Positions 2,730-53,319 of a DNA stretch of 64,000 nucleotides are shown here, one piece after another. The position numbers and the translations under genes were made by a program. Location of the stretch: the IMG/VR virus record IMGVR_UViG_3300021964_000012, positions 186,001-250,000 of that record, one strand, 5' to 3'. The notes below the pieces were generated by a model. It searched no databases. It was not told the DNA's origin and saw only the letters and a program-made list of their open reading frames with translations. Position 1 is the stretch's first letter; each line of letters starts with the position of its first letter.

Positions 2730-3058
2730 TATTTTTTAGCTTTGCCTACTGCTTGTGCACCAAAAAATGCTGCCACAATAGCCGCAACTGATACAAAGTA
2801 TACTGCTGCCATATCACCTAATATCTTAGCAGCTTGATCCATGCCAATTATATTTGCTATTAGTACTATTGCAGGATATAGTAACATACCAAACAGTGCA
2901 AACCATGCCATGCTACGTTGTGCATCACGCATAGCATCTGCATCTTCTAGTTCTTTGCGTTTGAACTCTAGATACATTGCCTGTTCTTCTTCAGTTACTT
3001 TTCCATCACCGTTTGTATCTGCAGGATGAAAACCTGCTTGTTTAATTTCTTCTGCCAT
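2729..3058 (-). CDS. EF-hand-loop membrane protein with 2 TM segments, possibly holin-like
   Basis: Canonical 12-residue EF loop DTNGDGKVTEEE followed by two hydrophobic helices. It has its own TAAATA promoter at 3084-3089. Confidence 0.5.
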   Translation of the reverse strand: MAEEIKQAGFHPADTNGDGKVTEEEQAMYLEFKRKELEDADAMRDAQRSMAWFALFGMLLYPAIVLIANIIGMDQAAKILGDMAAVYFVSVAAIVAAFFGAQAVGKAKK

Positions 3059-3086
3059 TCTAGCTCTCCAATGGTTAACTTTCTAT

Positions 3087-6525: not shown

Positions 6526-6747
6526 CTAATAGATTTTGGTTTTTTTTGGGTCAACTCGACGTGGTTCGCATACTGCGATATAATTTTGAGTTTTTACTTC
6601 ACCTTCGCCTGCACGTGAATTTGGCACACTGGGTTGGTTGTTGAGTCTTTCTGCAAAATACTTACAACTATCAATGCTGTGAAAGTACATATTTTGATTT
6701 ACTATATTTTTTCCAAGGTAGACTATTAGTAAAAACACATGAGTCAT
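6526..6747 (-). CDS. Small hydrophobic-N-terminus, 2-Cys hypothetical protein
   Basis: Hydrophobic start, F.SIDSC and AVC. Same layout as 7281-7481. Confidence 0.5.
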   Translation of the reverse strand: MTHVFLLIVYLGKNIVNQNMYFHSIDSCKYFAERLNNQPSVPNSRAGEGEVKTQNYIAVCEPRRVDPKKTKIY

Positions 6748-7217
6748 GAGTACATTATAGCACTAATAATACCACCAGCAATAACAATAAGTATACCGAA
6801 TCCCATTAATGCCATCTTTATATCTGACCAAAGTTCTTCATTTTCTTTTTTGGCTTTGATACGTGCTTGACGTTGTGCTTCTTTGTGTTCAGCAATACGT
6901 CTTGCACGTTCTTCGAGTATGCCTGCCCAAGTTCCTGGGCCAAATCGTAGATTGACAAGTGTGGCTATTTCTTGTAGTTTTTCAGCAGCTAGTTTTTGAT
7001 CAATTGTTTCTTGTGCAATGTGAGCAGTGTCAAATTGTTCTTTGACACCCATCTGGCGTTTGTTAACTTTTTTGTCTAACTCTTGTTTTCCACGTAATAG
7101 ATTGTCGATATGACCGCCTATCTCGCTTATGTCTTGACAGGTTTGAATATTTGATTTTATAAAGTCAACACTACTTTTTACCAGGGCAATCCCTGCTAAT
7201 ATTTCTGCAACTGGCAT
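6744..7217 (-). CDS. Helical protein with C-terminal TM anchor
   Basis: Coiled-coil body and C-terminal ALMGFGILIVIAGGIISAIMY. Has a structured leader and its own late promoter (7269-7274). Confidence 0.55.
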   Translation of the reverse strand: MPVAEILAGIALVKSSVDFIKSNIQTCQDISEIGGHIDNLLRGKQELDKKVNKRQMGVKEQFDTAHIAQETIDQKLAAEKLQEIATLVNLRFGPGTWAGILEERARRIAEHKEAQRQARIKAKKENEELWSDIKMALMGFGILIVIAGGIISAIMYS

Positions 7218-7280
7218 ATCATTCCTCTGTTCCTCCAGGTAGGAACCTATCTAGCTCCTGGACAGCTATATTTAGCGGTA

Positions 7281-7481
7281 CTAAGGAATTAAATTCTTAT
7301 CAGATAATATACACACGGCACTGGTATTTTTTGGAAACCGATTACTGACATCTTTGTATTTTTTTGTTGCAATGTTACACACTTCTTCAGTTTCAAACAC
7401 ACCAATAAACTCTACGTGTGCATCTACTGTCAGTAGGTGAACTATAACTAATATCCAAACCATAACATTATATTTACTCAA
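7281..7481 (-). CDS. Small 2-Cys hypothetical protein, probable paralogue of 6526-6747
   Basis: Hydrophobic N-terminus, FETEEVC and AVC. Confidence 0.45.
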   Translation of the reverse strand: MSKYNVMVWILVIVHLLTVDAHVEFIGVFETEEVCNIATKKYKDVSNRFPKNTSAVCILSDKNLIP

Positions 7482-7484
7482 AAA

Positions 7485-7509
7485 AATAGCACCCGAAGGT
7501 GCTACTTTT
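7485..7509 (-). terminator. Intrinsic terminator after the porin gene
   Basis: TAGCACC-CGAA-GGTGCTA hairpin followed by a U-tract on the minus strand. Confidence 0.8.
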
Positions 7510-7526
7510 ATAATGTTTATTGTGTA

Positions 7527-8513
7527 TTAGAAAGAAGCGGCAATTTTAAATTGTAAAACTGAACCATCATCATCTGTTGATGCTTCTCCACCGTTCTTGT
7601 ACTCATAGTCTGTGTAGTTTACATAACCAGTTAAACCTGGTGCAATAGCATGTTTAAGTTCAACCATGTTTTGCTTTAAGTTTTCTTTTTCAGAACCTGA
7701 TACATCTAATGCATCTTCTGATTCCATTGTTGAAACTGCAACAGTTGTAGTGTCATTAATTGCATAACTTGCACCACCGCCTACTGTTTCAATGTCCTCG
7801 TCTGCACCTTCTACAGTACTCATTGCACCAATAAGTGTTACTGCACCAAATGATACTTTAGCACCAATGCTTTGTGACTCATTGTCAATTGCACCTGATA
7901 CTTCTTGCATGCCTTTTGTGTAACCAATTTTGATGTTTTCATGAGTGTAACTTGCACCATATGCAGTTGAATCAGTTGCGCCTGTTGCGCCTGAATCCAT
8001 GTAACTTACACCAGCTTGTATTCCGCCGAAACTTGGAGAAATGTATGATACTTTGTCAAGATCTGCACCATATGTTTTTTCACCTGCATTTGATTGAATT
8101 GAAGCATTGGTGTATGTGCCAGTTACTTCTTCGTCCATGATGTCTTGCTCACCAATACCAAAGTTGTCTGTAACTGCATCGTTACCGCCTAGTATTAGTT
8201 TACCAGCAGCACCTGAAATATAAATTGATGATTCGTCAATGGTTGCATTTGTGTCTGCAACTGTTGCCATTTCAACAACCATACCATAGTTTAGGCCACT
8301 ATCAGTTTTGTTTGAGAAAGTAAATTTAATTTCATTATCTGTGTTGCCCATTGAATCACCTTTTTGTGAAGCAATTTGTGAATCAACATCTTTATAATAA
8401 AATTCGGAACTACCAGAAATAGTAAATTCTGGCTTATTAACTGTGGCTTCTTGTGCCAAAGCAGTTGTACTCAGCAGTGTAGCTATCACTGCCAACGGGG
8501 CTAGTTTTTTCAT
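7527..8513 (-). CDS. Gram-negative porin (alphaproteobacterial type)
   Basis: Signal ending ALA; alternating beta strands; N-terminal FTISGSSEFYY; GLNYG; YISPSFGGIQAGVSY; C-terminal Phe (IAASF). Confidence 0.85.
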   Translation of the reverse strand: MKKLAPLAVIATLLSTTALAQEATVNKPEFTISGSSEFYYKDVDSQIASQKGDSMGNTDNEIKFTFSNKTDSGLNYGMVVEMATVADTNATIDESSIYISGAAGKLILGGNDAVTDNFGIGEQDIMDEEVTGTYTNASIQSNAGEKTYGADLDKVSYISPSFGGIQAGVSYMDSGATGATDSTAYGASYTHENIKIGYTKGMQEVSGAIDNESQSIGAKVSFGAVTLIGAMSTVEGADEDIETVGGGASYAINDTTTVAVSTMESEDALDVSGSEKENLKQNMVELKHAIAPGLTGYVNYTDYEYKNGGEASTDDDGSVLQFKIAASF

Positions 8514-50753: not shown

Positions 50754-52204
50754 TCCAGTTTTTCTACACTGTACGGATAGTTCGCTTCTCTATAGAATGC
50801 TTTACGTTTGGTTAGATGTCTTTTTGCAAATCTGCAAGTAGATGTTATGTCCCAGATTTGGACGTGGTCTTTGTCTTCCGCTTTACGAATACCCCTGCCA
50901 ATACTTTGTATAACCCGTACAAAACTTTTACCAGGCTCAAGAAGGACAAGATTGAAGATACGTGGCAGATTAATGCCCACGGCCGCGACACCATATGTAG
51001 CAATAATAATTTTACCTGTCGCAGTAGCCACTTCATCGTACTCATCCTGTCTTGCTTTTGCTTTGGTTGCACCACTTACAAATACTGCATCATCGCCCAT
51101 TCTGTTTAGTAACTCTGTGCCAGCACTTATTCTATCAACCAATACCAATGTGTTACCAGTTTTATTTACTTCAATAACCAAGCCTGCAATGGTATCAAGT
51201 CTGCCTTTTTCTTCAAATAGATACTTTAATTCACTCTGATAGTTTGTAAATTCAGCATGATCAATTAACTGTACAACATTTACGTGACAGTTTGCAAGTA
51301 CACCTTTTTCCTGTAGCTCACTTGCAGCAAGTTGATTTATCACTGGCCCTAAACTACAATGCAATGCTTGAAACTCATATGGCTCTTTTGGCACTGTTCC
51401 TGTTAGTCCCCAACGCAATGGTACACGTGCCATTACTCCAGTGAGCAATGTTTTAAGTGCATCTGCTTTAGCCATATGTACTTCATCAACTATCACTGCA
51501 ACTACGTCTTCTAAAAACTCATGTATTGTAATATCAACTGTTTGGTTCTTTGTGTTCTTTAGCAACACATTTAGACTTTGCCATGTGCATATTGTATGCT
51601 TATGCCCAAACTCTTTTCTATCACCATAGAATACGCCAACATCAAGTTGCATGTTTGAATAGTCTGCTTCTGTTTGTGTAACCAAACTTTTATTAGGAAC
51701 TATTACAATACTACGTCCATAGTTTTCTACACGTTCACTTAGACTTGCAGTCATAATTGTTTTACCAGCACCAGTTGCTACTTCTTGTATGCACTGTGGA
51801 TTTTTTAAGAAACTGTTTATGATCTCTACTTGATAATCACGCATCTTAATAGGAGTGCCAGAGGCAGGATGATTCTTCGGCCACATAATGTCACTGTAAG
51901 TATCTTCTGCCACTGGATCAAACTTGAATACTGTTTGGTATTCTCTGTTGTCTTGTATGTCAACATCGTAGTTGAAGTCTTCTAATATAGGAAGTATATC
52001 TGGTAACAAGTTTAAGTATGTGCTACCGCCCATTTGAAAGTATGCAACCTTACCATCCCAACGTCCTAGTCGTACTGCTGGCAAGTATCTTGCATGCGGT
52101 ACATCATACTTGAAAGTGTTCACGAGTTTCTTACGAACATCAAGCTCTAGTCCTGATATCTTAAGATTTACTTCATCATTTATTATTAGTGTTGCCGTTC
52201 TCAT
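50744..52204 (-). CDS. UvsW-like superfamily 2 helicase
   Basis: RDYQ, ATGAGKT, VDEVH, GLTGT, GINLP and QSIGRGIR. Confidence 0.92.
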   Translation of the reverse strand: MRTATLIINDEVNLKISGLELDVRKKLVNTFKYDVPHARYLPAVRLGRWDGKVAYFQMGGSTYLNLLPDILPILEDFNYDVDIQDNREYQTVFKFDPVAEDTYSDIMWPKNHPASGTPIKMRDYQVEIINSFLKNPQCIQEVATGAGKTIMTASLSERVENYGRSIVIVPNKSLVTQTEADYSNMQLDVGVFYGDRKEFGHKHTICTWQSLNVLLKNTKNQTVDITIHEFLEDVVAVIVDEVHMAKADALKTLLTGVMARVPLRWGLTGTVPKEPYEFQALHCSLGPVINQLAASELQEKGVLANCHVNVVQLIDHAEFTNYQSELKYLFEEKGRLDTIAGLVIEVNKTGNTLVLVDRISAGTELLNRMGDDAVFVSGATKAKARQDEYDEVATATGKIIIATYGVAAVGINLPRIFNLVLLEPGKSFVRVIQSIGRGIRKAEDKDHVQIWDITSTCRFAKRHLTKRKAFYREANYPYSVEKLEWN

Positions 52205-52210
52205 AATATT

Positions 52211-52238
52211 ATTATATACACTTTTTGTAATTAGTCAA
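52211..52238 (-). promoter_or_regulatory. sigma70-type promoter of the helicase
   Basis: TTGACT-16-TATAAT. Confidence 0.6.
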
Positions 52239-52272
52239 GGAAAGTGGGCAACATTTTTACAACATTGCCCAC
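52236..52272 (-). terminator. Intrinsic terminator after the AAA ATPase gene
   Basis: GTGGGCAA/TTGCCCAC stem (extendable with G-U pairs) followed by UUUCCUU. Confidence 0.7.
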
Positions 52273-52276
52273 CTGT

Positions 52277-52309
52277 GGTTGTCCAGGAGCTAGATCTGAT
52301 ATGACAACC
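52277..52309 (-). ncRNA. 3'-UTR hairpin with apical loop AUCUAGCUC (candidate antisense sRNA seed)
   Basis: GGUUGUC-AUAU-CAG-[AUCUAGCUC]-CUG-GACAACC. 16 nt are exactly complementary to the leader at 7249-7264. Confidence 0.5.
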
Positions 52310-52313
52310 TATT

Positions 52314-53126
52314 CTATCTGCGTTTCATCACAGTGTTTTCTGCTAACTGTTTCCAGTTAGGACTTACCTTTGTAAGATCTGCTATCTTCAACGCCATTCT
52401 CAAACTGACTTCTCTTAATTTATCCTTAACAGTATCCATGAAAGCAATTACTTCGCCTTCCATTTCTTTACTAAGATCATAATCCTTAAACAGTTCGCCT
52501 GTAGCAACAATCTGTTTAATACGTAAGAACTTGTCTCTCATAGTATCAAGTGTAAGATCCAAGTAATGACATCTTGATTGTAATGCATCTAAATGATCTT
52601 GTAGTTTTTTACTTCTAACGTTCTCAAATTTTACATTAGTAATAAAAATTACACCGCCTTTGAATTCAAACTTGTCTGGAATACCTTCTGATCTAAGTTT
52701 GTTACTATCTGCATTCCAATGTAGCACACGTTTCTTACCTGAATCAAGTGCAGCCTTAAGTATATTAAGACTAAGTTCGTCCATAAGCACACTGTCACAG
52801 TCATCAAATACTAACACATGGTTAGCATCTGCATGTCTGTATAATGTAGCATATAGTCCTAGTGCAGTCATTGCACCTTTTACGACTTCATACTTGATTG
52901 GTCTACCAGCAATGCTATCCATCATTGATGCTTTGTCTAATTCTTTTTCAACTCCATAACTCTTTCCGACTCCTGGAGGTCCAGTAACAATCATAGCTCT
53001 AACATCACCAGCAATAACTGCTTTGGTCATATCATGTAGTATATCAAAACGTGTAGCAATACGGTCCATAACCTGCTGATCAGTTTCAAAATTAATAGTT
53101 TTGGAATCTTGTTTTTTCATTTGCAT
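52314..53126 (-). CDS. AAA+/P-loop ATPase
   Basis: GPPGVGKS, VFDDCD, FITN and ALQSR. Start moved to MQMKK (AGGAGAG RBS). Confidence 0.88.
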   Translation of the reverse strand: MQMKKQDSKTINFETDQQVMDRIATRFDILHDMTKAVIAGDVRAMIVTGPPGVGKSYGVEKELDKASMMDSIAGRPIKYEVVKGAMTALGLYATLYRHADANHVLVFDDCDSVLMDELSLNILKAALDSGKKRVLHWNADSNKLRSEGIPDKFEFKGGVIFITNVKFENVRSKKLQDHLDALQSRCHYLDLTLDTMRDKFLRIKQIVATGELFKDYDLSKEMEGEVIAFMDTVKDKLREVSLRMALKIADLTKVSPNWKQLAENTVMKRR

Positions 53127-53167
53127 TCTAGCTCTCCTATGCAATGTTGTTTTCTAACTGTATAAAC

Positions 53168-53195
53168 AGCTTAACACATTATACGTATATGTCAA
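53168..53195 (-). promoter_or_regulatory. sigma70-type promoter (TTGACA-16-TAAGCT) with a TATACGTATA palindrome in the spacer
   Basis: Read directly; the palindrome is at 53180-53189. Confidence 0.5.
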
Positions 53196-53196
53196 C

Positions 53197-53319
53197 CTAT
53201 TTCTTAAGTTTTTTTGATGGTTTATAGTCTTTGCCAGCAACTTTTTTTTGCATTTCGTCTCTGCCTTCAACGTATGTATCAACTATTTCTTGCCACTGTT
53301 GTTTAATCCATTTTAACAT
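53197..53319 (-). CDS. 40-aa peptide MLKWIKQQWQEIVDTYVEGRDEMQKKVAGKDYKPSKKLKK (missing from the ORF track)
   Basis: My translation; follows the stop of 53326-53487 by a few nt. Confidence 0.6.
   Translation of the reverse strand: MLKWIKQQWQEIVDTYVEGRDEMQKKVAGKDYKPSKKLKK

What the first reader, a model, noticed from the sequence alone, without database searches (positions are those of the whole stretch)
52236..52312. 3'-UTR hairpin whose loop is antisense to several phage translation-initiation regions
Seen: the AAA ATPase 3'-UTR folds with AUCUAGCUC in the apical loop, followed by a terminator. Its 16 nt at 52280-52295 are exactly complementary to the late leader at 7249-7264. The seed target GAGCUAGA also lies between SD and AUG in an identical 14-mer GGAGAGCTAGAATG at 3056-3069 and at 53124-53137, the ATPase's own RBS. 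Two coding hits also exist (23910, 42636). A 16-mer match anywhere in 64 kb is not rare by chance, but one joining two short intergenic regions with the seed displayed in a loop is much less likely (my rough estimate, not a computed value). Inference: an early-transcript-derived sRNA represses late membrane/lysis-type genes and autoregulates its own gene.
Basis: partly seen in the sequence, partly recalled or inferred. Interest (0 to 1): 0.7.

Follow-up and report, generated by a model that had tools for sequence, protein, structure and literature searches.

The report
Phage mRNA tail pairs own start
The untranslated tail of an early ATPase gene in a marine giant phage has a hairpin loop that matches the gene's own ribosome-binding site; match and site change together across relatives, so this is probably self-regulation, possibly also of one late gene.

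Summary
The window is part of a 328-kb T4-related marine jumbo phage. After the stop codon of an early NrdC.10-like AAA ATPase gene (53126->52314, minus strand) lie a 7-bp hairpin with a 19-nt loop (52277-52309) and a terminator hairpin (52242-52274).

The hairpin is conserved in relatives. Eight of its 9 stem pairs show compensatory changes, and the loop core UAGCUCCU never varies.

The loop is complementary to the ATPase's own Shine-Dalgarno sequence and spacer. This pairing co-varies: at least five lineages have unrelated RBS sequences, each matched over 8-12 nt by its own 3'UTR. Lineages without a 3'UTR element show only background matches of 4-5 nt. The best reading is an icaR-like 5'/3'-UTR fold-back that closes the RBS.

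It recurs as a 17-mer at the orthologous place in a relative with 84% ATPase identity. It starts at the predicted first base of a T4-type late transcript. In two other contigs that segment is the RBS of a 9-codon leader ORF. Action in trans on this late mRNA is therefore plausible but less well supported.

The match at the 3056-3069 RBS is not kept in the closest relatives. Nothing has been tested by experiment.

The parts
52277..52309 (-). 3'UTR hairpin: 7-bp stem (52303-52309 with 52277-52283) and 19-nt loop (52284-52302) that carries the anti-RBS sequence AUCUAGCUCCUG
   Evidence: Fold. In 12 relatives 8 of 9 stem pairs have compensatory changes and 96% of cells are paired, while the loop core TAGCTCCT is invariant.
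52235..52274 (-). Terminator-like 14-bp hairpin (52242-52274) plus a short U-tract
   Evidence: Fold. The stem sequence varies with compensation in relatives and is followed by better U-runs there. Two metatranscriptome contigs end exactly at 52237, while others read through. The simple scan did not call it.
52314..53126 (-). Early gene for an AAA ATPase of unknown function, homologous to T4-type NrdC.10
   Evidence: AAA_16 and phrog_1250, E 6.6e-83. tblastn finds PA5oct at 45% identity and Straboviridae genes annotated nrdC.10.
53127..53138 (-). The ATPase's own Shine-Dalgarno sequence plus spacer, AGGAGAGCUAGA, the cis partner of the loop. Pairing is 8 contiguous bp, or 5 + 6 bp around a bulged A
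   Evidence: The orthologous RBS in relatives matches its own 3'UTR over 8-12 nt.
53141..53150 (-). 5'UTR segment ACAACAUUGC, complementary to the 5' arm of the terminator hairpin (GCAAUGUUGU)
   Evidence: It is not kept in close relatives that have other terminator stems, so its role is uncertain.
53168..53197 (-). Sigma-70-type early promoter (GGTTGACA, N11, TGTGT, TAAGCT), part of a promoter and 5'UTR cassette repeated at least 6 times in the genome
7249..7264 (-). Candidate trans target: 16 nt complementary to the loop plus 5 nt of the 3' stem, at the predicted 5' end of a late mRNA
   Evidence: A 17-nt version lies at the orthologous site in G006, and the same 15-mer occurs in L232 and L233.
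7269..7274 (-). Late-promoter-like TAAATA, 5 nt upstream of GUCCAGG. It reads TATAAATA in L233
   Evidence: In the genome 10 of 13 TATAAATA copies touch the 8% of sequence that is non-coding.
6744..7217 (-). Late gene downstream of the candidate trans target: 157 aa, widely conserved, function unknown
   Evidence: Synteny porin, small ORF, promoter and 15-mer, then this gene is kept in G006.
3056..3069 (-). RBS and start codon GGAGAGCTAGAATG of gene 3058->2729, a doubtful trans target
   Evidence: The identical 14-mer occurs in the G006 orthologue but not in orthologues with 98% and 95% protein identity.

Best explanation
The hairpin is an anti-RBS element built into the 3'UTR of the early ATPase mRNA. 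The gene is transcribed from a host-type early promoter. When the 3'UTR has been made, its exposed loop (UCUAGCUCCU) can pair with the Shine-Dalgarno sequence and spacer of the same mRNA, either by folding back or between two copies. Pairing at -12 to -1 would hide the site from 30S subunits. The inferred effect is that translation of the ATPase is limited or shut off after the transcript is complete, perhaps with cleavage of the duplex. This is how the icaR mRNA of Staphylococcus aureus behaves.

Shown here: the structure, its conservation, and the co-variation of RBS and 3'UTR.

Inferred: that the pairing happens in vivo, that it represses, and whether it acts in cis or in trans.

In this lineage the same loop plus five stem bases also matches the 5'-terminal RBS-like segment of one late mRNA. 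The stable 3' end may therefore act in trans as well.
For: (1) The hairpin is a selected structure. Eight of 9 stem pairs change on both sides and 96% of cells stay paired, against 26-45% when the partner is slid. The loop core is invariant.

(2) The RBS and 3'UTR are complementary in five unrelated sequence forms:
- A: AGGAG(A)GCUAGA with a UCUAGCUCCU loop.
- B: UAGGAGUUCA with a UGAACUCCUA loop.
- C: GGAGAGAGA or AGAGAGAGAG with CU-repeat loops.
- D: UAACGGAGUAUC with GAUACUCCGUUA directly after the stop codon.
- E: GGAGAUGAGU with ACUCAUCUCC.

(3) The matrix of longest complements (RBS window against 3'UTR, 26 representatives) is block-diagonal. Values are 7-12 within a type, mostly 8-12, and mostly 4-6 between types. 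Six lineages with no complementary 3' element give 4-5.

(4) Dinucleotide shuffles of the 3'UTR reach the observed match in 1, 0, 11, 10, 1 and 1 of 2000 trials for L029, L035, L046, L067, L066 and L086. The window's own type gives 47 of 2000.

(5) Among 172 genes of this genome with a 3' non-coding tail, the ATPase ranks second for cognate RBS-3'UTR duplex energy. Only 1 of 342 non-cognate comparisons is as good.

(6) The pairing covers the SD up to -1.

(7) The mechanism has an experimental precedent (PMC3868564).
Against: - There is no experiment, and no read-level RNA ends. The metatranscriptome data are assembled contigs from related strains, and some span the terminator.
- In the window's own clade the cis pairing is the weakest of type A, and weaker than representatives of types B, D and E (8 bp, or 5 + 6 bp with a bulge; -14.7 kcal/mol; shuffle p about 0.02).
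- Every anti-SD-like loop will match GGAG to some extent. Type C is low-complexity and barely significant by itself (L045: 411 of 2000; L060: 114 of 2000).
- Within a type the evidence is conservation, not co-variation. The independent events number about five.
- Cultured T4-like phages have no 3'UTR after this gene, so the feature is not general to the gene family.
- Repression is inferred only from the position of the pairing.
Confidence: 0.65

Rival explanations
1. [quoted passage not shown] The hairpin and terminator accumulate as a stable ~75-nt species from early transcripts. Its loop is the seed. It blocks the RBS of a late mRNA (gene 7217) and perhaps other RBSs, and the ATPase's own RBS is only one target among several.
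For: - A perfect 16-nt match to 7249-7264, against a maximum of 14 nt in 100 simulated genomes. It is the only site in 328 kb that matches the 12-nt loop core.
- A 17-nt match at the orthologous place in G006, with diverged flanks.
- The same 15-mer follows TAAATA-N5 in L232 and L233. There it is the SD and spacer of a 9-codon leader ORF that ends 1 nt before the main ATG.
- The match extends 5 nt into the stem, beyond what the ATPase RBS shares.
- The predicted duplex is -30.9 kcal/mol, against about -15 for the own RBS.
- One contig ends at 7261, 2 nt from the predicted start.
Against: - L232 and L233 were retrieved by the exact 15-mer, so its invariance there is by construction.
- Their ATPase loci are not on the contigs.
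- G001, a type-A relative, lacks the target gene altogether.
- Other lineages have unrelated purine-rich leaders. In the one contig holding both loci (L047/L321, type C) the match is only 6-7 nt of low complexity.
- In the two records checked for another loop type (type-B fragments), no extra target above control was found.
- The RBS at 3056-3069 is not conserved in the closest orthologues.
- In the window itself the target lies 32-47 nt upstream of the ATG, which has its own SD.
- The co-variation across lineages is with the ATPase's own RBS.
Confidence: 0.3
2. The hairpin is only a structural 3' stabiliser or part of a two-hairpin terminator. The complementarities arise by chance from an SD-like or anti-SD-like composition.
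For: It sits directly upstream of a terminator. CU-rich loops match any GGAG. The whole-genome count of GAGCTAGA is 10, near the roughly 8 that I estimate from base composition. Cognate RBS-3'UTR energies across the genome show no general excess.
Against: A stabiliser needs no invariant loop. Five different extended matches of 10-12 nt reach well past GGAG into lineage-specific spacers. Lineages without the element drop to background.
Confidence: 0.05
3. The two complementary segments are DNA-level inverted repeats that flank the ATPase gene. They would be the ends of a mobile or invertible cassette, recognised by a recombinase.
For: Inverted repeats of 8-12 bp bracket an 0.8-kb gene and co-vary between lineages, as the ends of mobile elements do. 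The region downstream is a hot spot for gene insertions.
Against: The left repeat always coincides with the SD and spacer. The right one is displayed in a hairpin loop whose stem co-varies, or lies just after the stop codon, always upstream of a terminator. In every locus where a helicase hit was found, it lies downstream of the ATPase on the same strand. No recombinase is adjacent. The insertions start after the terminator, not at the repeats.
Confidence: 0.04
4. The conserved loop is the binding site of an RNA-binding protein, from the phage or the host, for example a translational repressor or a nuclease cofactor. It would not be a pairing partner.
For: The loop sequence is invariant while the stem varies, which is typical of protein-recognised hairpins. 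T4 regulates early mRNAs with the proteins RegA and RegB (established knowledge).
Against: A protein site would recur as the same sequence, not as its complement, at the RBS. The loop sequence differs completely between lineages while always tracking the cognate RBS. No RegA or RegB homologue was detected, although that search had no positive control.
Confidence: 0.04

Closest known systems
icaR mRNA 5'/3'-UTR interaction in Staphylococcus aureus (PMC3868564)
   Same: A pyrimidine-rich anti-SD motif in the 3'UTR pairs with the Shine-Dalgarno region of the same mRNA. In icaR this blocks the initiation complex and creates an RNase III substrate.
   Different: Here the mRNA belongs to a phage of a presumably Gram-negative host. 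The 3'UTR is short (about 75-110 nt, against more than 100 nt reported as long for icaR). The anti-RBS sequence is lineage-specific and extends through the spacer, so it is not a generic UCCCC. Support comes from co-variation across lineages, not from experiments. There is also a possible trans target.
3'UTR-derived trans-acting sRNAs of bacteria (for example the prtV-derived CisR acting on CTX-phi cep, PMC13250501; CpxQ and SroC from my own knowledge)
   Same: A conserved seed lies just upstream of the parental mRNA's terminator hairpin, and the complementary site overlaps an RBS in another transcript.
   Different: No separate small RNA has been shown. The best-supported partner is the parental mRNA itself. 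The U-tail is short, and dependence on Hfq is unknown.
B. subtilis hbs 5'/3'-UTR interaction (PMC5737220) and the hok mRNA fold-back (fbi/tac, from my own knowledge)
   Same: Long-range pairing between the two ends of one bacterial mRNA controls its fate.
   Different: The title and abstract of the hbs paper tie that interaction to ribonuclease action and mRNA stability. The hok fold-back belongs to a toxin-antitoxin system with 3' processing and an antisense RNA. Neither context is evident here.
C/U-rich loop motifs of Gram-positive sRNAs (RsaE, RNAIII; from my own knowledge)
   Same: Hairpin loops display CU-rich anti-SD sequences. The type C loops of relatives are runs of CU repeats.
   Different: Those are independent sRNA genes with many targets. 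Here the loop sits in an mRNA tail and tracks one cognate RBS.

Membership tests
icaR-type 5'/3'-UTR autoregulatory pairing | The 3'UTR holds a motif complementary to the SD region of the same mRNA | tested here: met
   In the window: 8 contiguous bp, or 5 + 6 bp. In relatives: 10-12 nt.
icaR-type 5'/3'-UTR autoregulatory pairing | The complementarity is maintained by selection (conserved or co-varying) | tested here: met
   Five sequence types, a block-diagonal matrix, and shuffle p of 0.0005-0.006 per type.
icaR-type 5'/3'-UTR autoregulatory pairing | The pairing blocks translation initiation and lowers protein output | not testable with these tools
   Inferred only from the paired positions, -12 to -1.
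icaR-type 5'/3'-UTR autoregulatory pairing | The duplex is cleaved by RNase III | not testable with these tools
   No data.
3'UTR-derived trans-acting sRNA | A discrete short RNA shares the mRNA's terminator | tested here: inconclusive
   Contigs from two RNA runs end at 52237, but they are assembled contigs with no 5' end information, and others read through.
3'UTR-derived trans-acting sRNA | A conserved seed with conserved complementary sites in other mRNAs | tested here: inconclusive
   The seed is conserved. The late-leader site is conserved in G006 and found in two contigs retrieved by pattern. It is absent or untestable elsewhere.
Intrinsic terminator | A GC-rich hairpin followed by a U-run | tested here: inconclusive
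   The 14-bp hairpin is strong. The U-run is UUUCCUU, and the consensus scan found no terminator. Relatives have longer U-runs.
Any curated RNA family (Rfam 15) | A match at or near the gathering score | tested here: not met
   Only chance-level snoRNA and lncRNA matches, E 0.7-2.
hok/sok-type fold-back inhibition | A toxin mRNA locked by pairing of its 3' end to its 5' end, with an antisense RNA and 3' processing | tested here: inconclusive
   Pfam and PHROGs searches gave only an AAA ATPase domain match and an unknown-function family, with no toxin annotation. I did not look for an antisense RNA gene. The pairing here is directly to the SD.

The most novel reading that the evidence does not exclude
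The ATPase 3'UTR is a dual-purpose riboregulator and a temporal switch. In cis it closes its own RBS as soon as the transcript is finished, so each early mRNA is translated only while it is being made. The nuclease-resistant hairpin-terminator remnant then persists into late infection. There it pairs with the first 15-16 nt of a late mRNA and blocks the leader-ORF RBS on which translation of a conserved late protein (hydrophobic C-terminus) depends. If so, many uncultivated marine jumbo phages would carry RNA-only, co-evolving early-to-late control. Such control would stand where T4 uses the proteins RegA and RegB.
Probability: 0.25. Interest if true: 0.8.

Novelty: new member of a known kind. 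Interest (0 to 1): 0.62.

Why it matters
Regulation of a bacterial-type mRNA by pairing of its own 3'UTR to its own ribosome-binding site is known from very few cases. The authors of the icaR study called theirs a singular example. My literature searches found no described case in a DNA phage.

Here the pairing is backed by co-variation across a large clade of abundant, uncultivated marine jumbo phages. That is stronger comparative evidence than usually exists for such contacts.

It gives a concrete, testable example of RNA-based control of early gene dosage in phages. It also offers a candidate RNA link between early and late expression. The approach could be reused: scanning genomes for complementarity between each gene's RBS and its own 3'UTR picked out this gene and one more in this genome.

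Tried and rejected
- Nucleotide search of the phage collection found nothing close.
- Rfam gave no family.
- Enrichment of GAGCTAGA: significant in the window but not genome-wide, and the coding hits are Glu-Leu codons. I dropped it as evidence.
- The first search for relatives of the late target gene returned only proteins of 64% identity or less, with unrelated leaders. A pattern search and a coding-anchored search were needed.
- G001 lacks the late gene. The L232 and L233 records lack the ATPase. Co-variation of the trans target therefore could not be tested.
- Type-B records show no extra targets above control.
- The RBS at 3056-3069 as a conserved target: rejected as unsupported.
- A general rule that genes of this phage pair RBS with 3'UTR: rejected, because cognate and non-cognate energies have the same mean. 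The one stronger case, G000:58605-60473, is not conserved at 55-59% identity.
- The 10-nt match between the 5'UTR and the terminator arm is not kept when the terminator differs.
- The leader folds with and without the first 15 nt blocked were ambiguous about the direction of regulation.
- RegA and RegB family searches were empty but had no positive control.
- Cultured T4-likes (Acj9, Ci1) have no 3'UTR after this gene. PA5oct shows only an 8-nt match, which I estimate at p about 0.04.

Full report
**Setting**

The window is bases 186001-250000 of a 328,292-bp viral record with direct terminal repeats. G+C content is about 37% and most genes are on the minus strand. The gene at the centre of the finding, 53126->52314, encodes a 270-aa AAA ATPase (AAA_16; phrog_1250, E 6.6e-83). 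Its cultured relatives are the PA5oct jumbo phages (45% identity) and the Straboviridae gene called nrdC.10. A DNA helicase gene follows at 52204->50744.

The ATPase is driven by a host-type promoter: GGTTGACA, 11 nt, TGTGT, then TAAGCT. This promoter belongs to a promoter-plus-leader cassette found at least six times in the genome. I therefore treat the ATPase as an early gene.

**The observation**

The minus-strand RNA after the stop codon folds into a 7-bp stem with a 19-nt loop. An inner 3-bp closure leaves AUCUAGCUC at the apex. A 14-bp hairpin follows (z = -3.8).

The 16-mer is an exact reverse complement of 7249-7264, and both sites are transcribed from the same strand. The 8-mer GAGCTAGA is over-represented in the window (6 against 0.8 expected). 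It occurs only 10 times in the whole genome, against about 8 that I estimate from base composition. Its coding copies are Glu-Leu codons. I give that count no weight.

**The hairpin is a selected structure**

A search of viral contigs with the ATPase protein gave 257 relatives, of which 80 were kept. In all relatives down to about 75% protein identity, the stop codon is followed by the same arrangement of hairpin then terminator.

In an alignment of 12 distinct versions, 8 of 9 stem pairs show changes on both sides. Of all cells, 96% stay paired, against 26-45% when the 3' partner is slid by 1-3 columns. No shuffle out of 500 reaches the observed values. The loop core TAGCTCCT is invariant.

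The terminator stem and the genes downstream vary freely. In many relatives 0.8-2.3 kb of other genes sit between this terminator and the helicase. The hairpin therefore belongs to the ATPase transcript.

**The main result: the loop matches the ATPase's own RBS, and the two co-vary**

In four relatives of the window's loop type, an exact 10-mer AGGAGCTAGA occurs twice per record. One copy is the complement of the loop. The other lies about 845 nt away, directly upstream of the ATPase start. In these fragmentary records the other 1-mismatch hits are few and look like chance. In the 300-kb record G001 they match the control count (8 against 10).

I then read the leader and the 3' region of every locus with both ends. 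At least five unrelated forms appeared:

- A: AGGAG(A)GCUAGA with loop UCUAGCUCCU (the window and L029-L040).
- B: UAGGAGUUCA with loop UGAACUCCUA (L046, L048).
- C: GGAGAGAGA or AGAGAGAGAG with loops made of CU repeats (L045, L054, L060, L067, L075).
- D: UAACGGAGUAUC with GAUACUCCGUUA starting inside the stop codon (L066, L077, L080, L082).
- E: GGAGAUGAGU with ACUCAUCUCC (L086).

I computed the longest Watson-Crick complement between each RBS window (-22 to +8) and each 3'UTR (65 nt) for 26 representatives. The matrix is block-diagonal. Values are 7-12 within a type, mostly 8-12, and mostly 4-6 between types. Six lineages give 4-5: in some the next gene follows at once or only a plain terminator is present, and L052 has a hairpin whose loop does not match.

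Dinucleotide-preserving shuffles of the 3'UTR reach the observed length in 1, 0, 11, 10, 1 and 1 of 2000 trials for representatives of types A, A, B, C, D and E. The window's own version is weaker, with 8 contiguous pairs and 47 of 2000.

Within this genome I compared 172 genes that have a non-coding tail. Cognate and non-cognate RBS-3'UTR duplex energies have the same mean, so this is not a general habit of the phage. The ATPase nevertheless ranks second, with only 1 of 342 background comparisons as good.

**How it most likely works**

The paired segment runs from the SD to position -1, so pairing should keep 30S subunits off. In types A to C the 3' partner is held open in a hairpin loop. In types D and E it lies single-stranded next to the stop codon. 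All of these are accessible contexts.

The simplest model is a fold-back within one mRNA, or pairing between copies, that limits translation once the 3' end has been made. It may also create a double-stranded nuclease site. Base pairing between the icaR 3'UTR motif UCCCCUG and its own SD was shown to do exactly this (PMC3868564). A 5'/3'-UTR contact also controls hbs mRNA in B. subtilis (PMC5737220).

What is shown here is structure, conservation and co-variation. Pairing in vivo, the direction of the effect, and cis versus trans action are inferences.

**The late-leader match**

For the 33-nt hairpin as query, 100 simulated genomes gave longest matches of 10-14 nt. The real genome has 16 on the strand that makes the RNAs complementary and 11 on the other strand.

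The relative G006 (316 kb, ATPase 84% identical, same loop type) has a 17-nt complement to its own loop and stem. It lies at the orthologous position: after a porin gene and a small ORF, and about 34 nt before the orthologue of gene 7217.

Two further contigs carry the same 15-mer. In all four sequences it begins 5 nt after a TAAATA motif, which reads TATAAATA in L233. The flanks differ between the four. TATAAATA is the T4 late-promoter consensus (established knowledge). In this genome 10 of its 13 copies touch the 8% of sequence that is non-coding. The complementary segment is therefore probably the very 5' end of a late mRNA. One metatranscriptome contig ends 2 nt from that point.

In L232 and L233 the AGGAG inside the segment is placed 5-6 nt before an ATG or TTG. 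That codon opens a 9-codon reading frame ending 1 nt before the main ATG, which itself lacks a good SD. In the window this start is lost and the main ATG has its own SD. In those relatives, pairing would cover a functional-looking RBS from the SD to -1.

Several limits apply:

- The two extra contigs were found by the exact pattern.
- Their ATPase loci are unknown.
- The relative G001 lacks the gene.
- Other lineages have different short purine-rich leaders.
- The only contig holding both loci for another loop type shows just a 6-7-nt low-complexity match.

The other proposed target, the RBS at 3056-3069, is identical in G006 but different in orthologues of 98% and 95% protein identity. I regard it as unsupported.

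**RNA evidence**

Marine metatranscriptomes contain contigs of related strains across the ATPase gene. Contigs from two runs end exactly at 52237, the end of the short U-tract, while others bridge it. These are assembled contigs without strand or read ends. They show presence in RNA libraries and little more.

**Comparison and novelty**

No Rfam family matches. Literature searches found the icaR and hbs cases and several phage-related sRNAs. They found no description of a 5'/3'-UTR contact in a DNA phage, and nothing on nrdC.10 regulation.

I file the element as a new member of the known kind "3'UTR pairs with its own RBS". It has a phage setting and unusually good comparative support. A possible second role in trans would make it more novel. 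There is no experimental evidence, and the cis pairing in the window's own clade is among the weaker versions.

Noticed in passing
window 7527-8513 (-): The phage carries a Gram-negative porin gene (Porin_4, E 1.9e-32). A porin-like gene sits at the same place in relative G006.
   Followed up: partly
window 7471-7510 (-): A strong terminator with a UUCG tetraloop follows the porin gene. Near-copies occur at two other genome places. The stretch is very deep, and joined to many different flanks, in marine metatranscriptome contigs.
   Followed up: partly
window 52203-52238 (-): The helicase gene has TTGACT, 16 nt, TATAAT, and then its ATG only 6 nt later, which would give a leaderless mRNA. The same TATAAT-N6-ATG spacing appears before whichever gene follows the ATPase terminator in many relatives.
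   Followed up: partly
window 53151-53206 (-) and five other genome sites (L002-L006): An early promoter and 5'UTR cassette of about 55 bp is repeated at least six times in the genome. It has a conserved transcribed part ACAGTTAGAAA followed by AGGAG.
   Followed up: partly
L012-L023 and other loci, between ATPase terminator and helicase: Relatives carry 0.8-2.3 kb of different extra genes just after the ATPase terminator, so this is an insertion hot spot.
   Followed up: no
G000:C1:58605-60473 (-) = L331: A second gene (622 aa, no family) has a leader and RBS with an imperfect complement of about 27 nt. The complement lies inside a 35-nt loop of a hairpin in its own 3'UTR. It is the top outlier of the genome-wide scan (z = -7.1). 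The match is not seen in relatives at 55-59% identity.
   Followed up: partly
window 53141-53150 (-) with 52258-52267: The 5'UTR segment ACAACAUUGC is complementary to the 5' arm of the terminator hairpin. In lineage B a similar 5'UTR motif, CAACAUAGCA, matches the 5' half of the 3'UTR loop in a crossed order. I have no explanation.
   Followed up: partly
L232 and L233, leader of the orthologue of window gene 7217->6744: A 9-codon leader ORF starts 5-6 nt after the 5'-terminal AGGAG and stops 1 nt before the main ATG, which suggests translational coupling. The window has lost this start.
   Followed up: yes
L238-L246, L253, L257, L287, L290, L307, leaders of the same gene in more distant relatives: An 8-nt inverted repeat, for example ATCTATCT with AGGTAGAT, would fold the SD of the late gene into a local hairpin downstream of a TATAAATA promoter.
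   Followed up: no
L328 (Pseudomonas phage PA5oct, MK797984.1 248674-250241): The homologous gene's RBS spacer AGTAGCAT is complementary to the 3' arm of the hairpin just after its stop codon. The match is 8 nt, which I estimate at p about 0.04.
   Followed up: no
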